Source of the DNA: Geosiphon pyriformis uo1
Lineage: Eukaryota; Fungi; Glomeromycota
Assembly: GCA_016748015.1 (NCBI GenBank)
Contig: JAAOMT010000577.1
Location: 1-64,000, forward strand
Length of the DNA stretch: 64,000 nt
Reading direction: 5' to 3'
Shown: in pieces, positions 1,460-64,000 of the stretch
Layout: each line of letters opens with the position of its first letter
Numbering within the stretch: the first letter of the stretch is position 1
Position numbers and translations under genes: made by a program
Notes under the pieces: generated by a model
Seen by the model: the letters and a program-made list of their open reading frames with translations, nothing else
What the model was told of the DNA's origin: nothing
The model's database searches: none

Positions 1460-3069
1460 TTATATACTAAAATTTTCTTCTGCTAATTGCTTTTCAAATC
1501 TAATTACCTTTTTTAATGCTTCATATGCTTCTGTAATTGTAATTATAGCAGGTGGAGATTCTTCTAATTCTTCTTCCGAGTCATTAATTGTATTGGTTTC
1601 AATTTGAGCATCGGCTAAAACCATATCTACAATTTCATTATTATCAAGAATATTTTCAGTTGCCAATAATTCATCAACTGCTACAGTATAATCTTCGANN
1701 NNNNNNNNNNNNNNNNNNNNNNNNNNNNNNNNNNNNNNNNNNNNNNNNNNNNNNNNNNNNNNNNNNNNNNNNNNNNNNNNNNNNNNNNNNNNNNNNNNNN
1801 NNNNNNNNNNNNNNNNNNNNNNNNNNNNNNNNNNNNNNNNNNNNNNNNNNNNNNNNNNNNNNNNNNNNNNNNNNNNNNNNATTATATAATATATAATGAT
1901 AATAATACTGTATATATTATATTACTTAACTATTCAATATTAATTTTTTGTTCAAATTGATGTAAAATATGTTGACATTATAAGTGCTTATATTTGCCTT
2001 TAAAAGATTTGATAATGCCAGCATCCATTGGTTGAAGATGTGATGTAGTATTTGGAGGAAAATAGTGCAAAGTAATATTGGTTAATTGGAATGAAACTTC
2101 TCCGATTTAAGTATGATGAGAAGTTGCATTATCAACCAAAAGTAATATATGCCGATTTTGAATTCGAAAGTCTTCATTTATATATTTGAGCCATGCTTTC
2201 CATATATCTGAGTGCATCCATGCTTTGGAATTGAATTTGTAAATCACAGGTAGGTTGGAAGTATTAATTCCTTTAAAGCATCTTGGATTTTTTGCATGTC
2301 CAATTACTAAAGGCTGCAATTTGTGAGATCCAGTTGAATTTGTAGCAAGAAGAATTGTAATCTGAGATTTATCCTATAAAAAACCCAATTAATTTAATAT
2401 AACAATAATATATAACAATAACAATTAGTAAATATAATATACCAATTTTTTTCCTGCATTTCGACATTTTGCAAGTGTTTGATTTGGTCCCATACGAAAA
2501 AATAATCCTGTTTCATCAGCATTATATATGTCAGCAGGATCAAATTTGGATATAATGGTTTTTAATTTTCTTCGTTCTTCTGGTAAACTTTCAGTTGATA
2601 CACTTCCTGCTTCACCATGAAATCGGTAAACACGTAACTGGTTTCATTTTTTGAATTTTTGAACCCATCCATTTGAGAATTGCATTTCATTTTCGTGCAT
2701 ACCAAGAAGTTTGGCAAATTCTTTTCCTTTCTCTTTAATTAGTTGATCATTGAATTCGATAGTGGCTGCAGTTACTTGTTCTACCCAATAACTTAAAGCT
2801 TGGTCTAATAATAGAAATTTAACGCTTTTGTGTCGAATAGATCTTTCTGAGATTTCATCAATTTCAATATTCAACCACTTTGTATGCTCTTTGATTATCT
2901 TGGAGACAGTTGGACGAGAAATATGAAGTTCTGGATATTTATTATTGAAGTAAGCTACAATATCATCATGTTTCGTGCCATAGTAATTTTTGGAATATTG
3001 ACAAATTTCTTTACGAAAAGCATCATTAACTGCTGCTCGTTTTTGTTTTTTGAATAAAGGTTCCGACAT
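1460..3069 (-). pseudogene. CENP-B/Tigger-type DDE_1 transposase, disrupted, with a spliceosomal intron
   Basis: Double-HTH N-terminus (ISRPTVSKII; FSNGWVQKFKK), IYNADETGLF, NSKAWM, LLLVDNATSH, HLQPMDAGII, acidic tail. GT-AG intron 2374-2442 (GKKL|DKSQITILL). Premature TGA at 2644-2646 and TAA at 1978-1980. Interrupted by an assembly gap. Confidence 0.88.
1699..1880. other. Assembly gap (182 N)
   Basis: Run of n inside the transposon. Confidence 1.
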
Positions 3070-9028: not shown

Positions 9029-11245
9029 CTAAACATCATGATATTCGAGAACAGTTTTATAAATTCTGCCCGTGTTCTTATTCCTCGCACTCGCTTCAAT
9101 TTCAAACTTTGAGAAAGTCAATGTAAATTCAATAGGGCGATTTTTTCCCATATGAATATCGGGTAAGTCGATCCTCAAGGTGCCCACAAATATAACGCCA
9201 GGCTCGTCACAATATTTGACGTTATCCCTGCTTGTGGCGAATACTTTAAACGTAGCCGACGTTTGATTATGGTACACAGGAACAAATTCATTTGTTATCT
9301 TGTGATCGACATTCACTTTTGTACCGCGTTCAATTAATGGACTGAATCGGTAACAGAGGCCCCCATCAATAACTCGCCTGTTTTTATCGATATTGGGTTT
9401 AAAAGCGTTTAAGATTTCAATCCCATAAGTGCATTTTAGTATACGTTCTTGAATGGTTTCCGTTTTTAGCCCTGTGAAATAATATATTTTTTAGATATCA
9501 GGTATGAGATTTATAATTTAAAATACAGAATATCTTTCTGAATGCATAAAAGCCTACCATAAGCTACTGCTCCACGTACAACAGCTGCGATTGGAACAGG
9601 AGGAACAGCGATAATTTTCACTTTTGTTCCAAAGATTTCATTAACCCTTCGAACCAAGTATGGGGATTCACTAAAACCTCCAACAAGAAATATAGCATCA
9701 CATTGTCCTTTTGCTAGCTCGAATTGTTTCTGAATCAGATCCAGAATTCTTTGAATGACTGGATCAAACATTGCTTGAACATCTTCAAATGTTAGCTCAA
9801 TTAGCCAATCCGCTTCTTCCATCTTATTCTTGGCATCCTCGTTCATATACTCCATGACTGCTGGACAATAATATGGAATATCAAGTTCTATTGTTCTATA
9901 TGATGATCGATCGCCTTTGAATGGCTCTTTTATTCTTTTACAAAAGAAACGTTGAACGAGGTATTGCATTTGTTTATAATTGTTCCTTTTGAGCTTCTCC
10001 ATTGCTCCATACCCAAGTTTTTTACCGAGGAATCGAATAAATTCACGATCCACAAATGTTGAACCACACAAATCACCTGTTCGTTCGGTAATTTCGCTAA
10101 TTTTGTTGTCTTCTAATAACTTTCGAACCGTTATGTCGACCGTGCCACCTCCACAGTCCACAACCATAAAGTTTGCTGAAATAAAATAAAATAATTTTCA
10201 GTTTCTAAGCACTAAACGCAGGAATGGATTAAGAGAGATGAGCTAATCCACTATAAACTTATTTACCGCCAGGGCCTAGTTTGTGTTCTTTTAGAACTGA
10301 TAGGCAATGAATAGCCGCAGCTTCAGCTATTTTTAAAAGCCGATTAATAATGAAAAGCATAATTGAGATCTTAACGAAGAGGGTCGAATTTTAGCCTTAC
10401 GCTCAGTGGTAAATTCTAAATTTCGTGAACGAAGACTATCCAATAGCCCAGCGTTAAATGCCGCGGTTCTGAGAACGGTACGAGTATTTACTGAAAGGGG
10501 GAAATAAAATGTCAGTTAGAAAATGTCGAAATCAAAAACTTTGCCTTCTATTGTAAATAGTTTGAATTAGCTTACAATTCCATTCGGCTGGTACAGTAAG
10601 TACCAGGCTCATCTGCTGAGGGAAAACCAATCCGGGCCATCGGTTTTGCAGATTCTCTTTTATTATCTATTAGTTTTAATCAAAGTCATCTTATTTTTTC
10701 CAGGTAAAAGCTTCGAATATCATTAGAAGTCTATATTTATACCTTTTGAATTTCCCTGAGATAATCAGTGATAGCTTTGACAGGAGTCAATCCATTTGGC
10801 AACCAAGGTTTTTCATGATGTCTCAATGCTGATAAATGCAACTTGAATAATTCGACCGGATGAGAATCGGGAATTTTTCCAGTACGACGTCGTCTCATAG
10901 GCTCTTCAACTAGTGCTGTTTCGCCCCAATGAATGACGTTCCAGTTTTCATCATATTGAAGTACAGTTGGAACCTTGAAATGTCCATTTCGATTGGGCCT
11001 TTAGCAATGATAGTACCTCAAGTTAGACGAGTTTACCATGCAAAAATCATAGCTAAAATTTTTTCCATACCACTGACTGTTTGTTTCAATTTCGGGATTC
11101 ACTCTGTTTGCAAAAGCGAAGGTGCTAAAAGTAACGCCAAAATCTTAAATGCAAAAAACTAATTTCAGATATGATAAAATATACATAAAATTCATTTTAA
11201 CATCTTACCAAGAGCAACAACTACACGCGTATCTGGTAATGTCAT
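9029..11245 (-). CDS. HSP70-like protein (HSPA12-type actin-like ATPase), multi-exon
   Basis: ATG at 11245: MTLPDTRVVVAL|DFGVTFSTFAFANRVNPEIETNSQW|PNRNGHFKVPTVLQYD...VELFKLHL..., LVLTVPAEW, FTTE|PEAAAIHCL, MVVDCGGGTVD, CGSTFVDREF, FLVGGFSESPYL, AVVRGAV. GT-AG introns. Confidence 0.93.
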
Positions 11246-23132: not shown

Positions 23133-24713
23133 TTAATAATTTCCATCTGGTTGGAATACGTGATTTAATCTTCGTTCTGCGCTACTATGATCATTTTGCA
23201 AAGCTTTCTTGTACCAAAGGATGGCACTATGAAGATCGATTAGAGTCCCTCGCCCATAATAATATAGTTCCCCAAGTTTACATTGAGCATAAGGGTCACC
23301 ATCTTCGGCTGATTTTAGATACCAATAAAAGGCTTTTTGAAAATCGACAGGCGTCCCAAGGCCTGAATGATGACAATAGCCGAGATAATATTCACCTTGA
23401 GGATCATTGGCAAGCGCCGATTTTTCATACCATTCGTATGCCGCAGTTAAGTTTACAGGGGTACCAATTCCATTTTCATAACAATAAGCCTTGTTCAAAA
23501 CGTAAATTGATATATAAATGAGACCATGAAGCGATAATTGAACATCAAAAATAATAAAATGCAAATTAAACACACAGACACACACACACCAAGTTATTTT
23601 GACCTCTCGTATATCCACCATTTGCCGATTTCTGGAACCAGTAAAAAGCTTCTTTATCATCTTGAGGTGTACCAATACATTTTCGATAACAATGTCCAAA
23701 CCCACATTGACCATAGGCATCACCAGCTTCAGCTGCTCTTTGATACCAGAAAAAAGCCCTTAACTCATTAACCTCTGTACCAATTCCTTTCTGATAATAA
23801 TATGCTAATGTGGCTTGTGCGTCTATGTCACCACCTCGAGCAGATTTTAAGTACCATTTAAATGCAATTGATTCATCTTTTTTGACACCAACACCTTTCT
23901 CAAAACATTTGGCGAAATTGTATTGAGCAGCAGTGCTTCCATTCTTTGCCGAAATTTCATACCACTCAAACGCTTTCTTATCATCTTTTACCGTACCAAT
24001 TCCATCTCGATAACAATGAGCAAGCAGGTTTTGACTGTATATACCTTTCATCTCTGACCCTTTTTTGTAAGATTCGAAAGCCATTTTCCAATCAGCATGT
24101 GTCCCGATGCCCTAAATTCAAAAATTTATCGACTCTTTAATCACTACCCAAGAAAATTTTTTGATTCAAGAGGAAATTGTCAAATCATTTCTTTATCCCA
24201 TTGATTTACTAATCTCACATGTTCGTAACAAAAGCCCAGTAAACAATGAAATTCGTCTCGATCATCGTCACCCATAAGATCCTTAAAGAATCTCGGTGGA
24301 TCTTGTTTATGCTCTGCCAAGTGTTCTGTAAGCTGGACAGCCATTCTATCGAAATATTCGCCTCGAAACAGTGCATCGGCGAAAATTTTTAATGTTTTTT
24401 CGATGAATGGCGGTTTGTTGCCAAAATTTTGACGGTGAGCTGTTATTCCTTGTATTAGATTGTCAATTGTCATTGAAATTGATAAATTTTACATTGATCA
24501 AATTCTATTCGAGCTAATATTTATACCATGTTTGATCCCTATATTGACATTGATCGGGTGTGATTGCTCCCGCGTGTTCAATGCATCATTTTTTTGTGAT
24601 ATTTCGCTTGAAGCACCATCCGCCATAACGATGTCGGTATCAAGAATAACAGATTTGTGTGATTTAAAAGCTTCAGATATTTTAATGTAAAGATTCAAGG
24701 AGGCAGTTGACAT
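23133..24713 (-). CDS. Sel1-like repeat protein, 4 exons
   Basis: ATG 24713. Intron 24449-24526 joins GIKH|GITAHRQ; then LLGFCYEH|GIGTHADWKMAF; GQNNL|AYCYENGIGT. About nine SLR repeats (AQxxLxxCYxxGIGTxxDxxKAFxWYxKSA). Confidence 0.9.
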
Positions 24714-25005: not shown

Positions 25006-26046
25006 ATGGCTGATGAGGTTGAGATCTCTTGTATATTATTTGGGTGATCACTCAATTATTTCAAAAGATAATTTTGAATATTCCTGTTTTATTCAAAGGA
25101 ATCCATAGACACCTCACAATTTGAACAAGAAAGCTGGTACACTGATGCACTTGGCAAGTTTATTATTTTTTGTTTTTCGTATAGGATGGACATATTTTAA
25201 CTAACTTTATTTTACAGAATTTTGGTCTGATAAACCGGCCACTGTTGGTGGTATGCTTGGTGGCTATGACGCAATATCAAACCTTGACATCAAAACTTCG
25301 CAAATCTTTCTGTCAGAATATGTAAAGGGAAAACGTGGGAAAGGAAACGCCCTCAAGACCCCACCACGTATATTAACAAAACATGCATGTGATTGTGGTG
25401 CTGGGATCGGACGCATTTCCAAGCATTTTTTACTTAAAATATTCGATAAGGTTGATTTGGTCGAATGCACACCAAAGTTCATAGAGCATGCCGAAAAAGA
25501 GTATTTGTTAAATGAGAAGAACGAAGGAAAAATAGACAAATTTTATTGTGTTGGATTACAAGAGTTTGATCCTGAACCCCAGAAGTATGATCTGATATGG
25601 TGCCAATGGGTACTCTTATATCTAAAGGATGAAGATTTAGTTTCCTTTTTGAAGAGGGCAAAGAACGGCTTAAAACAGAATGGTATTATATGTCTTAAAG
25701 AAAATGTCTCTGTATTTGGTTATTCATTTCATGAAGATGATAGTAGTGTGACAAGGTAAGAATTTTTTTATTTTTTTATTATCTTTTCTTTTCTTTTCTT
25801 TTCTAACTAAAAAATGATGCACAAAAATTTACCCAAAAAGATCTGATAAAATATTCAAAGAAATCTTTCAAAATTCTCGACTGAAACTCTTGAAAGAGGC
25901 AACACAATATGGATTTCCAGAAGGGTTGTTTGAAGTCAAGATGTAACAAATTTTCACATTTTTTTGTATTTGCAAAATTTAGATCCCTTTTTCAAAAATT
26001 TTTTTTGTTTTGTTTTATAAGGTACGCGTTGGCGCCAGATGTTTGA
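25006..26046 (+). CDS. NTM1: Alpha-N-terminal protein methyltransferase 1 (NTMT1/Tae1)
   Basis: WYTDAL|EFWSDKPATVGGMLGGY, ACDCGAGIGRISK, KYDLIWCQWVLLYL, LKENV, EDDSSVTR|SD, GFPEGLFEVKM|YALAPDV*. Includes GC-AG intron 25154-25217. Start (MADE micro-exon) is less certain. Confidence 0.93.
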
Positions 26047-27175: not shown

Positions 27176-28056
27176 TTAACAAAAATATCTGCTTGAGGGA
27201 AAATAGCTCACGTTGGGTTCAAATGCTTGACAAGGAATTCGTAGAAGGGCTTCAACTAATTTTCTTTGTAAGAGTAACGAGTGATGCTGATCCTGATATG
27301 TACCATCACCACGCTCATAACAAGTTGCAAGGTATTCAAATGCGGGAGGATACATAATCTTAGTTGCTTGTACCACCCAATACAGTCCATTTTTCATATT
27401 CTTTTTCTTGGCGAATTCTGACATTAAAAGTTCACCATAATTTTGCATTCCTTTCGGGTGCCCAAGAATTGCTGATTGCCGAAAATAATATTCAAAATGG
27501 CAATTTTCGGCTTCAATTCCATGCCTTTCAAAGAGGAGAATACCAGTATAACTTGCCGCGAGAGAATCGCCACAATGTGCAGCGAATTTGTAATATCTTA
27601 GAGCCCTTTTCCGATTTCTGATTTTAACACCAATCGCGTGATGAAGGAAATACCCACGCAAAAGACATAGTTTTGGGATGTGCAAGCTGACTTTGAGTAG
27701 TTCATATATTGACTTTGGATTAATACGATATCGTTCAAACCACTGTTCAAGCTTGTACACAATGTCTGTGTCTTTTTCAAGTCGGTATTGATAATGAAGA
27801 AACATAATTAAAATCCAAGTTAATTGTGTTTTTTCCTCTTCTGAAAGCTCCGCGAAGCCCAATCGACATTTTTCAAATTCAGTAAAAGTTATGTGTAATG
27901 TCGGGCAAGGTCCTTTAGAAGAGAATGATTAGAAAAAAAAATTAACAGGCTTAATTAATTGTTGGAATGTAAAATTAAACCTTCAGCCTTTGGATATTCA
28001 ACTTCTTGAAAAACACTTTCCCCAATGGACGTGCAGGCAAAACAGGAATCTGACAT
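27176..28056 (-). CDS. Sel1-like repeat protein (divergent repeats), 2 exons
   Basis: Exon 1 28056-27981 (MSDSCFACTSIGE...PKAE) and intron 27913-27980 join in frame to ORF 27176-27862. LRGYFLHHAIGV...ALRYYKFAA, YFRQSAILGHPKGM, AFEYLATCYERGDGT. Confidence 0.82.
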
Positions 28057-35965: not shown

Positions 35966-36961
35966 ATGGAATGGACTCCTCTTCCTGAAGACAGGCTTGA
36001 AATTAATCCAGCTGAAAGCGTTCTCCACATTTACAATACAATGAATAACGAATATCAAGACGATCGGTTAATTGTGAAAGAAGTTAAAAAGTGGCTAGCC
36101 TGGAATAATTATTCACCAAACCAACTTTTCTCAATTGTTACAAATCGAGCTCAAGAGCTATCATCGCAATACGCGAGTTTATATGCATTTCTTCATTGTT
36201 ATGGAATTGGCACTGTAGAAGACAAAGAACAAACTTTCATATGGTATAAAACGGCTGCTGAAAATGGTGATATCGCAGCTCAAAGTCAACTTGGGTGGTG
36301 TTGCTATACTGGTGTCGGGACACAATCTGATCATGACCAAGCCTTTTATTGGTTTCAAAAATCTGCCTTAAATGGATGTGCCACCGCTGAGGGGTGGGTT
36401 GGTGCCTGCTATGAGCATGGACACGGAACGCTTAAAAATCGAGAAAATGCTTTTGTATGGTATACCCATTCAGCCAATGATGGGGATGGCTGGGGAATGT
36501 ACAAACTTGGATATTGCTATGCTCGAGCCATTGGTACTCCTCAAGACAAGCTGCTTGCTGAACATTGGTTTCGAAGATCGGCTGAAGCGGCGAATCGCAC
36601 CGGTCAACGTATGCTTGCAAGTTTTCTTTTAGATAAAGAAGACAAGAACGATCATGAAGAAGCACTGATTTGGCTTCAAAAATCCGCAGAACAGGGTGAA
36701 TTAACTTCACAAAAGATGTTGGGTGATTATTATATGGAAACTGAAGACAAACGCGCTGTTTATTGGTATCGAAAGGCATCAGATGAGGGGTCTCAATACG
36801 CCCCATCAAATCTTGGCAGCTGTCATCAGTACGGTTTTACTGGCTTGAAAAAAGATATCCACGAAGCGATTCGTTGCTACAGAATTGCTGTGAAAAGAAG
36901 AGACTCGAATAGTCACTGTAAGCTCCGGAACCTTTTTCACCCGAATTTTAGAATAATTTAG
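35966..36961 (+). CDS. Sel1-like repeat protein, intronless, 331 aa
   Basis: About seven SLR repeats (AQSQLGWCCYTGVGT...AFYWFQKSA) after a helical N-terminal domain. Confidence 0.92.
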   Translation: MEWTPLPEDRLEINPAESVLHIYNTMNNEYQDDRLIVKEVKKWLAWNNYSPNQLFSIVTNRAQELSSQYASLYAFLHCYGIGTVEDKEQTFIWYKTAAENGDIAAQSQLGWCCYTGVGTQSDHDQAFYWFQKSALNGCATAEGWVGACYEHGHGTLKNRENAFVWYTHSANDGDGWGMYKLGYCYARAIGTPQDKLLAEHWFRRSAEAANRTGQRMLASFLLDKEDKNDHEEALIWLQKSAEQGELTSQKMLGDYYMETEDKRAVYWYRKASDEGSQYAPSNLGSCHQYGFTGLKKDIHEAIRCYRIAVKRRDSNSHCKLRNLFHPNFRII

Positions 36962-41500: not shown

Positions 41501-44019
41501 AAAGACATGATTTTCAAACAACTCAAATATATTATCAAATTTTGAATATTTTGTATGGTGTAAAGAAGGATTTCAACTAGAAGAACATTCCCGAAAAGGT
41601 TAGGCTTTGAAGAAATCTGAAACGCTAGAAAGTTCTGAAATAGACGCCTGTTTCAATAGCTCATTCTTTTAATATCAGAGATAGATTTAGTAACAAGTTT
41701 AATATAATTTCTTTGGCTCTCGCTTGCATAAAGTTTATCTTGGATTTCAGGGAGCCGATTTTGGAAATAAATTATTATATAAAATCTTTATATTACCTTG
41801 AAATTCAATTCGAAATTTTTAAATGTTAAATTTTCCAAATTTTTAACTGTTTAGGGGATCTTTCACTTGGCAGATATTTTGTATAAGCTTTTTAGGAATT
41901 TTGTTAAATACTATATATATTGCTTGAGATTTGAATATTTTAGATAAAGTCTACTTATAAAAGTTAATCTTTGCTCTGAAATGATTTATTTTTGAAGTAC
42001 ATGTATAATCGTTTTGAAATTTAATGCATTCGGCATTACTTCGCAAAATAGGAATATTTTAACTCTAATGAAACAATCAATAGATTTCAATTAAAGAAAG
42101 AAATTGAGTACATTGAAGCTTAAATATATTTTTCACAAAGTACATTAATATCAAAATTGTGAAATATTTTATAATGAACCCACAAAATGCTTTATTCAAT
42201 CAAAACCAAAAACTTGTATCAAAATTTATAATCTTTTAAGCTTTCAGGTTTGAGATTTTTATCACAATTCATTCTTTTTTAAAGAATTTTACAAAGTTAT
42301 ACATAATTCTAACAAGAATTTATTTCTTTTGTGAGCATAAAAAATTTTAGAACTTTTAAGTTAAACCATTTTAAATAAAAAAAATTTTCAACTGATTGTG
42401 TTAGTATAAGTTTAGAAATAAAATTTTCCTCGCCAGTCAAATTCAGAAAAATATTACTTATATACTATCAGCTCAAGATCAAGATCAAAAATCAATAACA
42501 CTTTCAAAAAAAAATATAGGAATTTTTAAGATTTTGGTTAAGAATTAATCATATAATTGGTTGAATAATGAAAAAATAATGCATAACTTTTATTAAATTA
42601 AAGCTAGCAGCTTTTTGTGAATACACCAAATAAGAATTTGGGTTTAAGAATTTTTTTTCATTAAATATCCTGATTTCGAAGCCTGTTAGGTTCATCATCA
42701 AATGACTTTTCTATAAAATTCTTTAAACTATTTTAATTTTCATACTAGAAAATCAGAAAATTTGTATTTCTATATATTTTGGAAATCAATAATCAATTTT
42801 TATATAGAGTATATTTTAATTTTGTAAATAGATTCAATTAAATTATGATTAATAGGTGTAAAAAGATGTAAATTAAAAAAGATACGATTAATTATTTATA
42901 TATTAAACATAATTAAAATTTTTTAAAAAAAAGTTTGTTTATTAAAAATAATTGAAGTTACACTTTAACATAAATTTTTTATTAATTTTTTATAATTTTA
43001 TAATTTTTTTAATTAATATTGTAAATTTCAATACAATTTAACATATTATTTATTAATTAACAATATATTTTAAATAGTTTATCATGTTAAATAATAATTT
43101 ATTTTATAGATTGTTATAAATCAAATTAAATACATTAAAAAATATTTTTAAAAAAAAAAGTAACTAGAAGTAATATAAATTCAACTTAAAGAAATATTAA
43201 CCAGAAAAAAAATTGAATGTTTAAACAATTTAATTAATGTAATCAATTCCAAAATCACAATTACAATAAATAACACAGCTGCTATAATTTATGTTTATAT
43301 TGATATTTTTTAAAATTTAACACAAGATTTTTAACAGTTTTTTATTCAATGAATTACAAGAGAAAATATCTTACTTTTTAATCTAATTCTAACAAAAATA
43401 TAAATAAAAAGAGATAAAATTAATATTGTTCTAAAAATAAAAAAATATTAACAATAAAATAGTTTATCCATATTATTTAAAAATTGGACATTTTGTGTTT
43501 TGAAATCGCATCACATTTCGGAACAGAGGCAAATGAAAATGATCTTGTTTACAAATTATTCGATTGAAATGTTTTTTTAGGCAGTAGACATCATATTCTG
43601 ATGAAATATAAAAATAATAAATTTTTTATTTTTAAATTCAAAAATTAGCACAATTTTTCGTCATCAAGCTTTGAAAAAATAATTAATTTGCGATATAGAT
43701 ATGACAGTATCAAATCCAAGACATTAAGAAATTACAATATTAAAGAATTCCTGATGTGCTTAAAAAGGTGTTATTTTGAAATTTTAGCTATTTAGTAAAT
43801 TTCACCGATGAAATATTTGCTTAATAATGTATATCGATAAAATGCTGGTAATATCATGTTCAAAATCGCGAAAATAAATGTACCACCTTTTTCTCTTCCC
43901 CCTCCTATTTCTTGAGGTAATCTCTCAAAATTCTGATATCACCACCTCTGCTATCAAGAAGCAAAAATAGAACTTCAAGCGACAAATCAACTCCTCTCTC
44001 CTCAGCGATATATCAATTT

Positions 44020-44566
44020 CAGATGTAGACAAGATTAGCGAACATTCTATAGTTCGCATTTAAAAATACTTGGATGATCTCATTTGCTAAAAGGATAATA
44101 TATTAGCATCCTCCTCAAAACGTAAGAATAAAATAGCCTGGGGATTTGATAAAACGATTTTTCGAATGCGGTAAAAATTTATACGTCTACAAAGTGAAAT
44201 TCAACGGAAATCAGTTAGATTCTTTACCCGCGAATTTGATGCCATTATCATTCCTCCTTTTTAAGTATCAGATATGGTGAATCCTAAGACAAGAAAGATT
44301 ACACGAAAAACTTTTCAGAAAATACTTTGTTGGGCGCATTATCGCTTTCGACAACGCCTGATCAGCAAGGCCGAGGAATTAGGAATTCGTCTTATTATCC
44401 AGAACAAAGCTTATAAATATAAGACTTGTATTTAATCTGTTAACATCAAAGAATCGGAGGGTTCGAAGTGTATAATTGCCGGAATTATGGGATTATGATA
44501 GATAGAGATGAAAATGAAACTCGGGGATCTTTTCTCGGGGCATTGGTTGATGGAGCCTGGTCATAG
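44020..44566 (+). pseudogene. Fanzor (eukaryotic TnpB-like RNA-guided nuclease) C-terminal relic
   Basis: ...RMR*KFIRLQSEIQRKSVRFFTREFDAIIIPPF*VSDMVNPKTRKITRKTFQKILCWAHYRFRQRLISKAEELGIRLIIQNKAYKYKTC, frameshift, IGGFEVYNCRNYGIMIDRDENETRGSFLGALVDG. This gives a RuvC-II region, a degenerate zinc finger and RuvC-III (DRDxN). Confidence 0.85.
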
Positions 44567-45323
44567 AGTGACCATACAGGAGCACCATCTCAGAAAGTAA
44601 TATCAATTTGAAATGTCAGATATTGTAATAATTATTTTTAGAAAACGAGAGAAACAATTTTTGTTTTTAAAAAATTTATTCATATATTTACTGCGCTGAT
44701 ATACAAATTTTGACTCTAGCTGCATTAAAAAAAGTAGCATAGAAAGATACACAAACCTAATACTTGATTGATTGTTCAATATTTGATACAAATATAGATT
44801 GATTGATCATAACCTTTGCGGGGTGAAATCCGAAAATCTTTATCGGGGTTTCACCTATCCAACCAAAGTTAAAAGATATTTTTTAAGATCAAAATTACCA
44901 TAGACCATAGAATAATTCAGCTTATTTATGTTAATTAAAAACTTTTCTTGTAAACCTTTATTTGGAATAAATTACATGTATTTTCTAAAAATAATACAGG
45001 GTAACAATTTAAAATATTATGTCATTTTTTAAAGAAACTATTAGAATAGGGGTAGGTTATTTAAACATGTATTTCTCAATTGACAGGAATTACACAGCCA
45101 GTTGACCGTCATACAAACTGAGAAATTGTGGCGGATGAATCTGATAATCGAAAAACAAATTATTTCTAAACTCTTTACAATTGATATTTTTCTTTTCTTA
45201 TTTATAAATCAAGATGGCAGTGCATTATTACATGCTCTCATAGGTTCGCATGAACAATATGTTAAAAATCAACGAATAGAAAAATCCATCAGTTAGCTCG
45301 CAAGAGTTTTGGCTTTTATGAAA

Positions 45324-45346
45324 CTCTCATAGAGACTCTATGAGAG
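45324..45346. promoter_or_regulatory. Perfect 23-bp palindrome upstream of the repeat-peptide gene
   Basis: CTCTCATAGAG-A-CTCTATGAGAG, about 65 bp upstream of TATAAAA (45412-45418) and 244 bp upstream of ATG 45590. Confidence 0.4.
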
Positions 45347-45589
45347 GTCAAATACAAACAAAAGAAAGAAAGAAAATTGAAAACAGCGTGACTTTGCCGA
45401 GGAGAATAATATATAAAAAGATGGGGAGGGCTTCAGAAAAGTTCATTGCTTCAAATCCCAAGTCTTTTATCCAACAAGTTTAGCAAATTTGATCTCATCA
45501 AATTATTTCCACAATCCAAAGAAAGAATCCGTTTTAAAGCTTCCAATTTTTGAGCCCAACTTTTAGATCTTTATAATTTCATTTCAAAA

Positions 45590-46525
45590 ATGGCACCAAA
45601 ATTCATCGCTTTATCTGCTTTGGCATATGCCGCTCTTATTTCTTTTGTTCTTTCTGCCAATGCTGATACAAATGTCAACGATAAACGTGGTAGTGGAAAT
45701 GGTAACAATAATGGCAATGGAAACAATGGTTCATTCAATGGCAACGGTAATGGAAACAACAACCAGGGATCATTAAATGGAAATTCCAACGGAAATTATA
45801 ATGATGGTTCATTCAATGGTAACGGTAATGGAAACAACAACGTGGGTTGGTTTAATGGAAATTACAACGGAAATTTCAACCATAAACGTGGTAGTGGAAA
45901 TGGCAACAATAATGGCAATGGAAACAATGGTTCATTCAATGGCAATGGTAATGGAAACAACAACCAGGGATCATTAAATGGAAATTCCAACGGAAATTAT
46001 AATGATGGTTCATTCAATGGTAACGGTAATGGAAACAACAATGTGGGTTGGTTTAATGGAAATTACAACGGAAATTTCAACCATAAACGTGGTAGTGGAA
46101 ATGGTAACAATAATGGCAATGGAAACAATGGTTCATTCAATGGCAACGGTAATGGAAACAACAATCAGGGATCATTAAATGGAAATTCCAACGGAAATTA
46201 TAATGATGGTTCATTCAATGGTAACGGTAATGGAAACAACAATGTGGGTTGGTTTAATGGAAATTACAACGGAAATTTCAACCATAAACGTGGTAGTGGA
46301 AATGGTAACAATAATGGCAATGGAAACAATGGTTCATTCAATGGCAACGGTAATGGAAACAACAATCAGGGATCATTAAATGGAAATTCCAACGGAAATT
46401 ATAATGATGGTTCATTCAATGGTAACGGTAATGGAAACAACAATGTGGGTTGGTTTAATGGAAATTACAACGGAAATTTCAACCATAAACGTGGTAGCGG
46501 AGTGTGGAAACGCCAGGATCAATAA
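45590..46525 (+). CDS. Secreted Kex2-processed repeat protein (KEP): precursor of four identical 65-aa Asn/Gly-rich peptides
   Basis: Hydrophobic signal peptide ending ..SANA, short pro-piece DTNVNDKR, 4 x (65 aa + KR), tail GSGVWKRQDQ. Intronless. Confidence 0.92.
   Translation: MAPKFIALSALAYAALISFVLSANADTNVNDKRGSGNGNNNGNGNNGSFNGNGNGNNNQGSLNGNSNGNYNDGSFNGNGNGNNNVGWFNGNYNGNFNHKRGSGNGNNNGNGNNGSFNGNGNGNNNQGSLNGNSNGNYNDGSFNGNGNGNNNVGWFNGNYNGNFNHKRGSGNGNNNGNGNNGSFNGNGNGNNNQGSLNGNSNGNYNDGSFNGNGNGNNNVGWFNGNYNGNFNHKRGSGNGNNNGNGNNGSFNGNGNGNNNQGSLNGNSNGNYNDGSFNGNGNGNNNVGWFNGNYNGNFNHKRGSGVWKRQDQ
45689..46492 (+). repeat. 4 x 201-bp coding tandem repeat with 39-bp internal periodicity
   Basis: Units 45689-45889, 45890-46090, 46091-46291, 46292-46492; identical peptides, only synonymous differences seen. 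Confidence 0.95.
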
Positions 46526-46921
46526 AGCCTCCATGAATGAGCTGTGCGCTTTGGTTTCGTAGACTTATCGTTGCGTCTCATAGACCCAGGAAAATGTCCA
46601 TTTGAGAATATGTAAGTTTGCCGTCAGGTTTAATCCTCTATGGATAGGGCCACTGTTCTTAGTTCGAACTGGAAAGGCCAGAGCACGTGTTTATCCTTAT
46701 TATATATAAAATGTACTTTAATAGCGTTAAAATTAAATTTACTTCTCTGTCAGTTAGACCATTTCTTCATTCCTTTAATAAAAGGTCACACTATCCAAAT
46801 TAGGAACACATTTTTGCAAAAACTCGAGTTGACATATAAATACCGGAAAATTTAATATTTTAAGTTGTCTGTTAAAATACAATTTTATTTGTTATGTAAA
46901 AATAAGTACTACAAATATATA

Positions 46922-52947: not shown

Positions 52948-53973
52948 TCAAGTGCGAAAAATGGTATGTAAGAGGTCTCTTGTATTTATTGTATCGTCAG
53001 AAATTAAACTTTTGTATAATTTAAGCGCACTGTGAGCGTCTTGACATGTACCAAATCCAGACCAAAAACAGTCAGCTTGATATTTTAGGCCTGTCGAATC
53101 TCCACAATCCGCAGCTTTTTTGAACCAGATATAAGCACGTCTAAAATCACGGGAAACACCTTCATTAACAAAATAATAATGTGCAACCCAAGTCATTGAA
53201 ACGATGTCACCGAGATATGCCGCCCGAAGAAACCATGCAAAAGATTTTTTGACATCCTTAATAGTACCACTTCCATTTCTATAGCAATTGGCGACCCAGC
53301 ATTGAGCTTCTTGAGTTCCCCGTTCAGCCGATTTCAAATACCAGTGAAATGCTTGGACTTCATCTTTCGAGGTACCAATACCTTGCCGATACCGATGAGC
53401 AAGTGTTAATTGTCCACTAGGACAACCACCTTCAGCTGATTTGATATACCATTCTACAGCTTTTTCTTCATTCTTCTCGATTCCTTCTCCACGCTCATAG
53501 CAAAAACCAACCCAAGCTTGGGCGGTGGCATAATTATTTCCTGCACTTTTTTTAAAATATCTCAAAGATTCTTCAAAATTTTGTGTTGTACCAAATCCTG
53601 TTCTGTAACAGAAACCAATTTGGTTTTGTGCTAACGGCTCGAAATCGGCGACATTTTTATACCAAAAAAAGGTTTTTTCTTTGTTAGCATCAGTTCCTAG
53701 TCCATAACAATATAGAAATGCAAGAAAAGAAGAAAAAGTTTTGTTTTTTTGTTGTTCGAAAGTCCATTGAAACAAATCTTTGGCTGATTTATCGTTAAGA
53801 ATTAACCATTTTTGACAACTTTTGACTATATCATCATCATTGTAATATGTATCACTCATTTCACGGAATAACATAAAGCAATCTTCAAAATTTGAAGATG
53901 GATCCGATATATGGTTTCGTTGTTCCTTGATCTGAAGCTCGCATTTTTTTTCGACTTTAATGTTACTAGACAT
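52948..53973 (-). CDS. Sel1-like repeat protein, intronless, 341 aa
   Basis: About seven SLR repeats (AQNQIGFCYRTGFGT; AQAWVGFCYERGEG; AQCWVANCYRNGSGT); same architecture as 35966-36961. Confidence 0.92.
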   Translation of the reverse strand: MSSNIKVEKKCELQIKEQRNHISDPSSNFEDCFMLFREMSDTYYNDDDIVKSCQKWLILNDKSAKDLFQWTFEQQKNKTFSSFLAFLYCYGLGTDANKEKTFFWYKNVADFEPLAQNQIGFCYRTGFGTTQNFEESLRYFKKSAGNNYATAQAWVGFCYERGEGIEKNEEKAVEWYIKSAEGGCPSGQLTLAHRYRQGIGTSKDEVQAFHWYLKSAERGTQEAQCWVANCYRNGSGTIKDVKKSFAWFLRAAYLGDIVSMTWVAHYYFVNEGVSRDFRRAYIWFKKAADCGDSTGLKYQADCFWSGFGTCQDAHSALKLYKSLISDDTINTRDLLHTIFRT

Positions 53974-54404
53974 TTTTTTAACTTGGGGAGTTGGAAAAAA
54001 AATGTTGTCTTAAATGTTTCTATTATTATGTAATGATTTATGTTTAAATATTTTTAAATTAATACAAATACTAGCGCTAATGAGAAAGGTATGATCTTAA
54101 AAGAGATAGTTGTACGACTACCAATGTTCAACCTTTTCACCGAATTTTAATAAGATCTAATTGATTGATCGACTAAGTGTGTGTATCTATTATAGTAATA
54201 TCAAATTCTACTATTGGGCAAAAACTGGTTTTGCAGGTAGCAGCAGATTTTTATATAATTAAAGTATTCTGTCAAAAAATGATTATTATTATTATCATCA
54301 TCTGGTAATTTACCAAGATAAATTATATTCCGTCTTGCGTTTACACAAACGAACGATTAATCCATATGAATTTTCATTAAACCATCTTTTATAAAATTAC
54401 GACA

Positions 54405-55073
54405 ATGTCCAATGAGATACGAAAACTCCTTGTAGAAATTATTGAAATCTATCGAGCGGGAGCTGAACGCTGGGAATCAGATGACATAATTCGAAGAGAA
54501 ATTGAGAATCGTTTGAATCTATTTTCTTCTGATTACACTGAAACATCCACCTCCCTCATGTCGCTTCTATCTCATACCACCACTGACACATTCAGCTTAT
54601 GTCTAAAAGGTTTTCTTACACACTACGGAATTGGAACTGTACGTGATCTTCATCAATCTTTTCGTCTATATAAAAAAGCATCAAAACTAGGTAATCGAGT
54701 GGCACAAAATGAATTAGGCTTTCTTTATCGTAACGGAATTGGAGTAAAGAGCAATAGGAACAAGGCTTTTATTTGGTATTCTAATTCCGCGAAACAGGGA
54801 TACGCTATGGGACAATCGAATTTGGCATATTGGTATATTGCAGGGAAAAGCAGTAAAAAGTATCAACAAGCGTTCTATTGGTATCGTAAAGCTGCTAGCT
54901 CTGGGCTAAAAACTGCACAATACCGTCTTGGGTCATTTTATATGTTGGATTCGGATGTTATTGTATGTAAACGGGATGTGCATGAAGCGTTGCGATATTT
55001 TACCAAAGTAGCAAAGCAAGGTCATACTAGTGCTCGATTAGCCGTAGAGTCAATATTTATGGCAGGTAGTTAA
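54405..55073 (+). CDS. Sel1-like repeat protein, intronless, 222 aa
   Basis: About four SLR repeats (AQNELGFLYRNGIGV; AQYRLGSFY). Divergent from 52948-53973. Confidence 0.9.
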   Translation: MSNEIRKLLVEIIEIYRAGAERWESDDIIRREIENRLNLFSSDYTETSTSLMSLLSHTTTDTFSLCLKGFLTHYGIGTVRDLHQSFRLYKKASKLGNRVAQNELGFLYRNGIGVKSNRNKAFIWYSNSAKQGYAMGQSNLAYWYIAGKSSKKYQQAFYWYRKAASSGLKTAQYRLGSFYMLDSDVIVCKRDVHEALRYFTKVAKQGHTSARLAVESIFMAGS

Positions 55074-62483: not shown

Positions 62484-64000
62484 TCAAGAAATCATCATTT
62501 CATTGAATTTCTGAATCATATCAACATTTTCATTTCCTTTGGCTTTCAAACAAGTTAACAAAGCTTTATGCTTATCTTTAAGGGTACCGATTCCTATATC
62601 GTGGCAATCAGTCAAATAGATCTTGGCATGTTTGAATGATTCTTTATCACACCGTTCAAACCAAAGATATGCCTTTCTGGGATTTCTCTCAGTACCAATA
62701 CCAAGCATAAAACAGTATCCCACCCAAAACTGACCATTGAGATAACCAGTGTCTGCGATTTCTTGATAAAGTTGAAAAGCTCTCTCTGAATCCTGTTCTC
62801 CTATACGAAGAGTATGAGCTAAATTACTTTTACCTTGGGGATGACCCATATCTGCCGATTTTTGGTAGTATGAGTTTCCTACATGACGGTTAAAGCCAAA
62901 TTCGGCCCCAAGGCTGTAGCAGTATCCAAGTTGGTTTAGAGCAAAAGGATCGTCTCCATCACCTGCCACTCTGTACCAAGGAATTGCTTTCTCAATATTG
63001 AGCCCAATCTTGTCACTATAACAAAATCCAAGTAAACAAGCACACTCAGGTAAAAATCGGAACTTTAATAGAATGTTAATAAGTACATCTTCTGATTGCT
63101 TTTCGATATCCCAATATTTTTTTAGGTGGCTAAAAACCAGCTGGTCATCTCCATCGAGTCTCGTATATTTGTCAAGAAGGGTGAGTGTATTTTCCAAAAG
63201 ACTAATTTCCTCTGGTGAGATCTCAAGACTGTAAAGCCGACGCTTGAGAGCGAAAAGAGTTGAGGCTAGTGGTGTATCAGGTATTGTAGTGTTATCTGAT
63301 TGTTGATCGGTTAATTCAGCCGTGTCAATTTTCTTAACATTCTCTGATTGTTCTTCACATGGATATGTTGAATATGAATCTGATGTCCAAGAAATTTGTT
63401 CTAAACTTTTCTCCACTTCTTTAAGATTAGGACGCTTTTTAGGATCTTGGGCACAACAACTCTTAGCTAATTGGATGAAATCTGCTGGAGCCCTAGCATT
63501 GGACCAATCACGCCTTCCTTCGTAGATATCCAGAATGAATTTTTCTTTATTTGTGAAATCGTACAGAGAAGCACCGGCTAGCTCGGCAAAAATGACACCC
63601 AACGCAAATATCACTGAATTTTCATCACGAGAGGCTTTTGGGTTCTTGACATATTGTGGGTCTGTGTATTTTAATAGATAGTACGTATTAACCGTATGGA
63701 TGTAATGATCTAATGAACGTTGAATAAACTTTAAATAGGCGATTTTAGCCCTTCCATTATGAATCCATATGTTCATCGGATTCTAAAAAAGAGTTATTTG
63801 TATGTGTGACATATTTTTTAATAAATACACTGCAGAAACTAACCATAGCTTCGATCAGCGATACCCTCTTTTCTTTAAGATATATGGTCCCAGCTACAAT
63901 ATCCTTTGCTATCTGAAGTTTTTGGGAATTTTCCAGCTGTTTTAGATCGTTTTCAAACCATTTAGAAAGTAATTCTCCATCACAATACTCCGTAACAAGA
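62484..64000 (-). CDS. Pseudokinase plus Sel1-repeat protein; 5' end lies beyond the window
   Basis: LVTEYCDG...KLQIAKDIVAGTIYL, intron 63783-63843, kinase C-lobe (YTDPQ, IFALGVIFAEL, CCAQDPKKRP), helical linker, about four SLR repeats. Confidence 0.88.

What the first reader, a model, noticed from the sequence alone, without database searches (positions are those of the whole stretch)
45590..46525. Secreted polyprotein predicted to release four identical 65-aa peptides, each five 13-residue Asn/Gly coils
Seen: signal peptide, then KR-delimited units GSGNGNNNGNGNN-GSFNGNGNGNNNQ-GSLNGNSNGNYND-GSFNGNGNGNNNV-GWFNGNYNGNFNH. All five subunits fit G-[S/W]-x-N-G-N-x-N-G-N-x-N-x, with invariant Asn at 4, 6, 8, 10, 12 and Gly at 1, 5, 9. 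The four units are protein-identical and differ only synonymously. Established: Kex2 cleaves after KR, and fungal KEPs yield pheromones, RiPP cores and surface peptides such as Ustilago Rep1 repellents. Inference: strict 13-aa periodicity with Asn ladders suggests a stacking beta-solenoid or functional amyloid, for example a hyphal or spore coat, adhesive, or mineral/ice template. No DUF3328 or other tailoring enzyme is visible nearby, so a structural role fits better than a RiPP. This is the strongest candidate for an undescribed system in the window.
Basis: partly seen in the sequence, partly recalled or inferred. Interest (0 to 1): 0.85.

Follow-up and report, generated by a model that had tools for sequence, protein, structure and literature searches.

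The report
Geosiphon RIC-family Asn/Gly coil precursor
This is a real, probably transcribed gene of the cyanobacterium-hosting fungus Geosiphon pyriformis for a secreted precursor likely cut into four 65-residue asparagine/glycine peptides; it belongs to the already named, very abundantly expressed but functionally untested RIC family, whose 13-residue repeat may fold into a narrow stacking coil rather than being disordered as published.

Summary
Observation confirmed. The 311-aa single-exon ORF has a hydrophobic leader and four identical KR-flanked 65-aa units of five 13-residue coils (20/20 fit). The genome is Geosiphon pyriformis.

The gene is under strong purifying selection (pN 0.007 vs pS 0.207 against a duplicate), evolves concertedly, and shows a transcript-like footprint. 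It is not an undescribed system. It is one of about 40 paralogs of the GpRIC / 'GN-rich IDP' family (Hoffrichter 2018; Schultz 2022, PMC8786786), for which Kex2 sites and amyloid propensity were already proposed; RIC1-3 made up 30% of reads in a cDNA library.

Not in that paper:
- the strict 13-aa register;
- an AlphaFold 13-residue-per-turn solenoid model (one of five models confident; no clear PDB match);
- the same coil in secreted proteins of Alphaproteobacteria, Methanosarcinaceae, green algae, plants and an ascomycete, a few beside FapD/FapF-like genes.

Best reading: Kex2-released coil peptides that stack into an extracellular wall or symbiotic-interface polymer (about 50%); cleavage, assembly and location are untested. 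The scan has already reported several paralogs elsewhere in this genome.

The parts
45590..45664 (+). Signal peptide (about residues 1-25; cleavage after Ala25 inferred from the -3/-1 rule)
   Evidence: Hydropathy peak 2.3; hydrophobic leaders in about 39 paralog ORFs
45665..45688 (+). Short pro-segment ending in the first KR site
45689..45889 (+). Unit 1: five 13-aa coils (65 aa, 6.5 kDa, pI 5.1, 29 Asn, 19 Gly) plus KR
45890..46090 (+). Unit 2, protein-identical, plus KR
46091..46291 (+). Unit 3, protein-identical, plus KR
46292..46492 (+). Unit 4, protein-identical (DNA identical to unit 3), plus KR
46493..46525 (+). 10-aa tail: first three residues of a fifth unit joined to unrelated, low-copy repeated DNA, then stop. 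The C773 duplicate stops directly after unit 4
45203..45589 (+). Upstream region with TATA-like boxes at 45203 and 45410; covered from 45220 by the transcript-like contig of run X2
   Evidence: contigs cannot show true starts
46526..46846 (+). Probable 3' UTR with AATAAA at 46777; matched with zero differences by the X2 contig 46468-46846, which is specific to this copy
43776..46485 (+). Segment duplicated on C773 (about 92% identical) and, more diverged, on C370; includes a TnpB/Fanzor-like relic at about 44020-44580

Best explanation
A RIC-family KEP (Kex2-processed repeat protein) that mass-produces a structural peptide. Step 1, inferred from strong precedent: the signal peptide sends the precursor into the ER; Golgi kexin cuts after each KR and a Kex1-type carboxypeptidase trims, giving four 65-aa peptides per chain. 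Step 2, predicted: each peptide folds as five stacked 13-residue turns of a narrow solenoid. The invariant Asn (4, 6, 8, 10, 12) and Gly (1, 5, 9) form hydrogen-bonded ladders and turns; variable positions 2, 3, 7, 11, 13 face out, with hydrophobic/aromatic stripes at 3 and 13. The in/out assignment comes from the conservation pattern, not from inspected coordinates. Step 3, inferred: having no capping domains, the peptides stack end to end (and co-assemble with paralogs) into amyloid-like fibrils or a film in the hyphal/bladder wall or at the Nostoc interface, as Rep1 repellents do in Ustilago.
For: Exact 13-aa register across 564 coils in about 40 Geosiphon ORFs, including uncut runs of up to 33 coils. 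pN/pS about 0.03 against the C773 duplicate. 14 deamidation-prone Asn-Gly pairs per unit, with Asp almost never replacing them, fits a folded, protected state (established chemistry; inference). AF2 with a 120-row alignment: pLDDT 83.8, pTM 0.78, one beta-bridge every 13 residues, confidence kept across the KR junction. Nearest folds are all solenoids (CsgA Z 8.3, RTX rolls, antifreeze solenoids). RIC1-3 made up 22.3, 5.0 and 3.0% of reads in an expression library (PMC8786786 Table S9), a structural-protein level. The same KR-unit architecture ending in His-Lys-Arg occurs in Paraglomus Pabra_AGL2. The coil is fused to a hydrophobin-like domain in Microdochium (Pfam E 0.022, below cutoff) and to VPLPA-CTERM-like surface anchors in bacteria (below cutoff). 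In 6 bacterial loci it lies beside FapD-like C39 peptidase and/or FapF-like channel genes. No STE13 dipeptides and no UstYa hit.
Against: Only 1 of 5 AF2 models is confident (others 34-47); single-sequence folding gave pLDDT 46. The alignment was built from overlapping in-register windows, which favours periodic contacts. DSSP shows isolated bridges, not extended beta-strands, so it is not a canonical cross-beta solenoid. CsgA match has rmsd 8.1 A and Z at background level; Foldseek found nothing. The peptide is very hydrophilic (GRAVY -1.66), unlike Rep1 or hydrophobins. The Fap-like neighbourhood is rare (4 of 120 unbiased 8-kb tiles). No proteomic, localisation or assembly data exist.
Confidence: 0.5

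Rival explanations
1. Folded but non-polymerising mini-solenoids whose regular faces bind a surface (chitin/glucan, Nostoc exopolysaccharide, mineral or ice), acting as adhesins or partner-recognition factors.
For: Variable outward positions are rich in Phe/Tyr/Trp and differ among about 40 paralogs. Antifreeze and adhesin solenoids are among the fold neighbours. Many family members are fused to other domains.
Against: No Thr-x-Thr ice-binding arrays or acidic arrays in this unit. No capping motifs. Extreme family expression suits bulk material better.
Confidence: 0.22
2. Secreted signalling or effector peptides (pheromone-like, or acting on Nostoc), or RiPP cores.
For: KEP architecture is shared with alpha-pheromones and dikaritin precursors (PMC6339444, PMC7329392). 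The family was named from a symbiosis library. Some paralogs also release 3-5 aa peptides.
Against: 65-aa units are far longer than pheromones (9-24 aa class). No STE13 signature; no UstYa hit. Most paralogs have one uncut block of up to 33 coils. The same coil occurs in bacteria and archaea.
Confidence: 0.13
3. Intrinsically disordered, hydrated gel or nitrogen-rich matrix protein, as classed by Schultz et al. 2022.
For: 74% Asn+Gly, no Cys, low-confidence single-sequence model and four low-confidence MSA models.
Against: Position-specific invariance and an indel-free 13-aa period across fungi and prokaryotes and pN/pS about 0.03 are not expected for a disordered chain.
Confidence: 0.13
4. 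Assembly artefact, or a non-expressed repeat/pseudogene.
For: No contig spans the array; the gene is absent from public protein sets; its tail is a rearrangement product.
Against: Open frame, purifying selection, a four-unit duplicate, and a transcript-like footprint with a copy-specific 3' contig.
Confidence: 0.02

Closest known systems
GpRIC1-3 and the GN-rich 'IDPs' of Ambispora and Paraglomus (Hoffrichter 2018 thesis; Schultz et al. 2022, PMC8786786)
   Same: Same organism or lineage, ER signal, Gly/Asn-rich and Pro-free, KR sites. Published Amlep_AGL4/5 and Pabra_AGL2 sequences show the same 13-aa coil and KR-separated units.
   Different: This 311-aa gene matches neither RIC2 (456 aa, probably the C773:379077 locus: 23+3x143+4) nor RIC3 (470 aa) by length; RIC1 could not be compared. 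The paper lists three Geosiphon proteins, calls them disordered, missed the 13-aa period and considered them Glomeromycotina-only.
Fungal KEPs (Le Marquer 2019 PMC6339444; Umemura 2020 PMC7329392)
   Same: Signal peptide plus near-identical motifs separated by KR.
   Different: Long units with an internal sub-repeat; no STE13 dipeptides; no DUF3328. The motif was not found in the held supplements of either survey.
Ustilago maydis Rep1 repellents
   Same: Kex2-released peptides without STE13 signature that structure the hyphal wall as amyloid-like fibrils: the functional analogue.
   Different: Rep1 peptides are about 37 aa and surface-active; this unit is strongly hydrophilic and periodic. No family-level sequence link was seen (Pfam blank).
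Bacterial functional amyloids (curli CsgA; Pseudomonas Fap)
   Same: Secreted Asn/Gly repeat solenoids; CsgA is the top structural row; some bacterial coil genes sit by FapD/FapF-like genes.
   Different: 13-residue period instead of the longer curli/Fap repeats (own knowledge). CsgA rmsd 8.1 A. No CsgA/Fap family hit. FapD/F scores are far below equivalog cutoffs.
Mycobacterial PPE-MPTR pentapeptide repeats (Pfam Pentapeptide_2)
   Same: The 13-mer parses as one N-x-G-x-x pentapeptide plus two N-G-N-x tetrapeptides. A Mesorhizobium coil protein grades from pentapeptides into 13-mers and hits PF01469 (E 3e-5, below cutoff).
   Different: The window protein has no Pentapeptide_2 hit; the period differs.

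Membership tests
GpRIC / GN-rich secreted proteins of early-diverging Glomeromycotina | Encoded by Geosiphon, Ambispora or Paraglomus | tested here: met
   Homologs named Geosiphon pyriformis G9A89 lie on contigs whose lengths equal C773, C609, C529 and C580 of this genome
GpRIC / GN-rich secreted proteins of early-diverging Glomeromycotina | ER signal, high Gly and Asn, little or no Pro | tested here: met
   Asn 38%, Gly 25%, no Pro in the mature part; hydrophobic leader
GpRIC / GN-rich secreted proteins of early-diverging Glomeromycotina | KR sites separating repeats; repeat like the published relatives | tested here: met
   Five KR sites flank the four units; published Pabra_AGL2 and Amlep_AGL4/5 show the same 13-mer
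GpRIC / GN-rich secreted proteins of early-diverging Glomeromycotina | Identity with RIC1, RIC2 or RIC3 themselves | tested here: inconclusive
   Length excludes RIC2 and RIC3 unless unit number varies; RIC cDNAs MH580277-9 could not be retrieved
KEP (Kex2-processed repeat protein) | Signal peptide plus repeated motifs separated by dibasic sites | tested here: met
   (hydropathy only; SignalP not available)
KEP (Kex2-processed repeat protein) | Kexin present in the genome | tested here: met
   P-domain plus transmembrane/acidic tail gene on C608
KEP (Kex2-processed repeat protein) | Actual cleavage and secretion | not testable with these tools
   Needs peptidomics
Dikaritin/ustiloxin-type RiPP precursor | DUF3328 (UstYa) tailoring gene nearby; short core peptide | tested here: not met
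   Neighbours are Sel1, Tyr-kinase, Hsp70 fragments and a proline dimethyltransferase 20 kb away; PF11807 0 hits genome-wide, without a positive control; units are 65 aa
Alpha-type pheromone-like KEP | STE13 X-A/X-P dipeptides after KR; 9-24 aa peptide | tested here: not met
   Units start Gly-Ser-Gly and are 65 aa
Curli/Fap functional amyloid | Sequence family match | tested here: not met
   No Pfam, NCBIfam or PDB-sequence hit
Curli/Fap functional amyloid | Cross-beta solenoid fold | tested here: inconclusive
   Solenoid model with one beta-bridge per turn; CsgA Z 8.3, rmsd 8.1
Curli/Fap functional amyloid | Fibril formation (ThT, EM, SDS resistance) | not testable with these tools
   Needs experiment
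Hydrophobin | Eight-cysteine pattern | tested here: not met
   No Cys in the protein
Beta-solenoid ice-binding proteins | Thr-x-Thr (or similar) flat array | tested here: not met
   No Thr in the unit; only weak fold rows, Z 4-7. Activity itself untested

The most novel reading that the evidence does not exclude
The 13-residue G-x-x-N-G-N-x-N-G-N-x-N-x coil is an unclassified Asn-cored narrow solenoid that polymerises as a functional amyloid. It would be used both by soil Alphaproteobacteria (protease-matured, in some cases exported by a Fap-like system) and by early-diverging Glomeromycotina, where Kex2-released units would be the main protein of the Geosiphon bladder wall or Nostoc-housing compartment.
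Probability: 0.3. Interest if true: 0.8.

Novelty: new member of a known kind. Interest (0 to 1): 0.45.

Why it matters
RIC transcripts are reported as about 30% of reads in a Geosiphon expression library, yet nothing is known about what they do, and most family genes (including this one) are missing from public protein sets. Geosiphon is the only known fungus with an intracellular cyanobacterial symbiont. A defined, synthesisable 65-aa unit makes the question 'what builds the bladder wall or symbiont compartment?' directly testable. If the solenoid model holds, it reclassifies a published 'disordered, Glomeromycotina-only' family as an ordered repeat fold that also occurs in bacteria, archaea, algae and plants. 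The gene itself is just one of about 40 copies.

Tried and rejected
- Pfam, NCBIfam and PDB-sequence searches of the protein or coil profile: blank.
- Exact look-ups of this protein and 16 paralogs (plus three neighbouring window proteins): none in the public collection, so RIC1-3 could not be matched.
- ESM Atlas by features: only 0.77 unnamed clusters.
- Foldseek against PDB and BFVD: nothing.
- Single-sequence AF2: uninformative.
- The search for related loci with a bacterial alignment failed on low complexity; replaced by a degenerate DNA pattern scan.
- The idea that bacterial coil genes are generally Fap-system cargo was tested and downgraded: C39 in 3 and FapF-like in 1 of 120 tiles. 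Commoner neighbours are further coil genes (57/120), LuxR-family regulators/two-component genes and a MacAB-like exporter.
- KEP survey and Kamel 2017 supplements hold no such motif; whether those files contain sequences at all was not checked, so this is not evidence of absence from Rhizophagus.
- Full-text search for coil motifs found no paper. The Rep1 paper and Hoffrichter thesis are not held.
- Hydrophobin and UstYa genome searches were blank but had no positive control.

Full report
OBSERVATION. The ORF at 45590-46525 (+) is a single-exon 311-aa gene. Splitting after KR gives a 33-aa signal/pro segment, four protein-identical 67-aa segments (65 aa plus KR) and a 10-aa tail. The units differ at four third-position C/T sites only. 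Lag-13 self-identity is 0.69 and no shuffle out of 100,000 reached it. The unit is 6.5 kDa, pI 5.1, GRAVY -1.66, with no Cys or Pro, 14 Asn-Gly pairs and one N-glycosylation sequon.

ORGANISM AND CONTEXT. The window is about 27% GC with Sel1 and Tyr-kinase genes. The assembly is 128.3 Mb in 792 contigs, and homologs named Geosiphon pyriformis sit on contigs of identical lengths. No tailoring gene is nearby. UstYa was not found genome-wide (no positive control). A kexin-like gene is present.

THE GENE IS REAL. A 2.7-kb segment including the gene is duplicated on C773 at about 92% identity. Between the two copies pS is 0.207 and pN 0.007. Units within a copy differ by 0-3 nt but by 9-12 nt between copies, which is concerted evolution under purifying selection, and both copies have four units. 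Run X1 (DNA) covers both flanks with both variants. Run X2, of the same sample, covers only 45220-46846 and misses the flanking high-copy repeats that X1 covers deeply, so I read it as RNA although it is labelled 'DNA?'. Its contig 46468-46846 matches this copy's unique 3' end with no difference. Its 5' contig is a mosaic of the three closest paralogs. These are assembled contigs, so they show presence, not level, strand or start. The tail is the start of a fifth unit joined to unrelated repeated DNA.

THE FAMILY. Searches of the genome give about 40 ORFs with a hydrophobic leader and the same coil (a lower bound that includes a few fragments). About 15 have two or more KR-separated coil blocks of 2-11 coils. 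The rest have one block, up to 33 uninterrupted coils, and some are fused to Ser/Thr-rich or Cys-containing regions. Over 564 coils, positions 1, 4, 5, 6, 8, 9, 10 and 12 are 90-100% fixed (partly by my selection rule). Positions 2, 3, 7, 11 and 13 vary, with 45% and 56% hydrophobic residues at 3 and 13. So the coil is the functional unit and KR cleavage is one way of packaging it.

WHAT IS PUBLISHED. Schultz et al. 2022 (PMC8786786) describe Gly/Asn-rich secreted 'IDPs' in Ambispora, Paraglomus and Geosiphon. They identify GpRIC1-3 from the Hoffrichter 2018 thesis, note their KR/Kex2 sites, and mention amyloid propensity. RIC1-3 were 22.3, 5.0 and 3.0% of reads in an expression library; RIC2 is 456 aa and RIC3 470 aa. 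Their Ambispora and Paraglomus sequences carry the same 13-mer, and Pabra_AGL2 has the same His-Lys-Arg unit boundary. Their repeat finder did not report a 13-aa period. RIC2 fits the gapped C773:379077 locus by arithmetic. The window gene is therefore a further RIC-family member; whether it is RIC1 could not be determined. Earlier agents of this scan reached the same family assignment on other contigs. Note s1-510034 prompted me to look for the literature, which I then read myself.

FOLD. Single-sequence AlphaFold of the 65-mer failed (pLDDT 46). With a 120-row alignment of fungal and non-fungal coils, the two-unit 132-mer gave one model at pLDDT 83.8 / pTM 0.78 and four at 34-47. The good model has one beta-bridge at position 13 of each coil, continuing across the KR. 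This is a 13-residue-per-turn solenoid of turns rather than long strands. Foldseek found nothing in PDB or BFVD. VIA-align lists only solenoids: CsgA Z 8.3 rmsd 8.1; springtail antifreeze protein Z 6.9 rmsd 3.3; RTX and antifreeze rolls Z 5.5-6.3. All are within the stated background. Atlas gives generic beta-helices, TM up to 0.62. The alignment design favours periodicity and I could not inspect coordinates, so the fold is moderately supported, not shown.

BEYOND FUNGI. Contrary to 'Glomeromycotina only', the same coil occurs in Coccomyxa, in hop and cassava root-cap-domain proteins (strict register seen in hop, weaker in cassava), in a Microdochium protein with a weak hydrophobin-like C-terminus, and in many prokaryotic secreted proteins. 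These genes come in clusters (57/120 tiles have two or more) near LuxR-type regulators or a MacAB-like exporter. In a Rhodopila MAG three coil-like genes carry a double-glycine-like leader and face a FapD-like C39 peptidase and a FapF-like channel. A second metagenome locus repeats the C39 arrangement. In the unbiased set only 3 tiles had C39 and 1 a FapF-like gene, so this is suggestive, not general. Homology versus convergence of such a simple repeat was not resolved.

MECHANISM. Shown: coding, selection, family size, probable transcription, presence of kexin. Inferred from precedent: secretion and KR cleavage into four 65-mers. Predicted: five-turn Asn-laddered solenoid. Inferred: end-to-end stacking into an extracellular polymer of the wall or symbiotic interface, by analogy with Rep1 and from family-level abundance. 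I give this 0.5. Rivals: monomeric surface-binding solenoid 0.22, signal/RiPP peptide 0.13, disordered gel 0.13, artefact 0.02.

VERDICT. But this is a new member of a named family with Kex2 and amyloid ideas already in print, not an undescribed system. Remaining interest lies at family level: an unclassified repeat fold, very high reported expression in a unique symbiosis, and an apparently unreported bacterial counterpart. Interest 0.45.

Noticed in passing
L055:3795-7835 (Rhodopila MAG); L056:6971-9713; L148; L098; L115; L170: Clusters of 2-4 secreted 13-aa coil genes in Alphaproteobacteria; some have double-glycine-like leaders beside a FapD/FilB-like C39 peptidase and a FapF-like channel. 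Candidate Fap-like fibre system with a new subunit.
   Followed up: partly
L059-L178 (GTDB pattern hits), L054, L057: The coil family is widespread and unannotated in Mesorhizobium, Methylobacterium, Pseudaminobacter, Aureimonas and others, and in Methanosarcinaceae; usually next to LuxR/two-component genes or a MacAB-like exporter. Some members have VPLPA-CTERM-like tails or RTX repeats.
   Followed up: partly
L054:6882-7340: Mesorhizobium protein grading from PPE-MPTR-like pentapeptide repeats (PF01469, below cutoff) into 13-aa coils; possible evolutionary link between the two repeat types.
   Followed up: no
window 44020-44580: Broken TnpB/Fanzor-like (IS605 OrfB) relic, Cas12f1-like TNB hit E 1e-4, with at least 35 copies in the genome; carried along in the duplicated segments on C773 and C370.
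   Followed up: partly
L011/L012 (G000:C773:379077-380470): Paralog with 143-aa units and an assembly gap; three units would give 456 aa, the published length of GpRIC2. Contig C773 holds at least five family genes within about 45 kb.
   Followed up: partly
L028, L023, L039, L044: Paralogs that interleave coil units with tiny KR-flanked peptides (3-5 aa) or end each two-coil unit in three Trp; these could release a second peptide class.
   Followed up: no
L048 (G000:C549:60800-63600): A different KEP family releasing many copies of a 21-aa Asn/Gln/Gly peptide.
   Followed up: no
P0011, P0023, P0009/P0012/P0015: The coil is fused to a weak hydrophobin-like domain (Microdochium), a Root_cap domain (hop) and an unnamed C-terminal domain (Coccomyxa).
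   Followed up: partly
window 23133-23723, 27176-27862, 35966-36961, 52948-55073, 62484-63776: Sel1-repeat and Tyr-kinase/Sel1 genes typical of the Glomeromycotina expansion; also a proline dimethyltransferase exon at 25253-25759 and an Hsp70-like fragment at 9511-10167.
   Followed up: no
window 1699-1880: Assembly gap (run of N).
   Followed up: no
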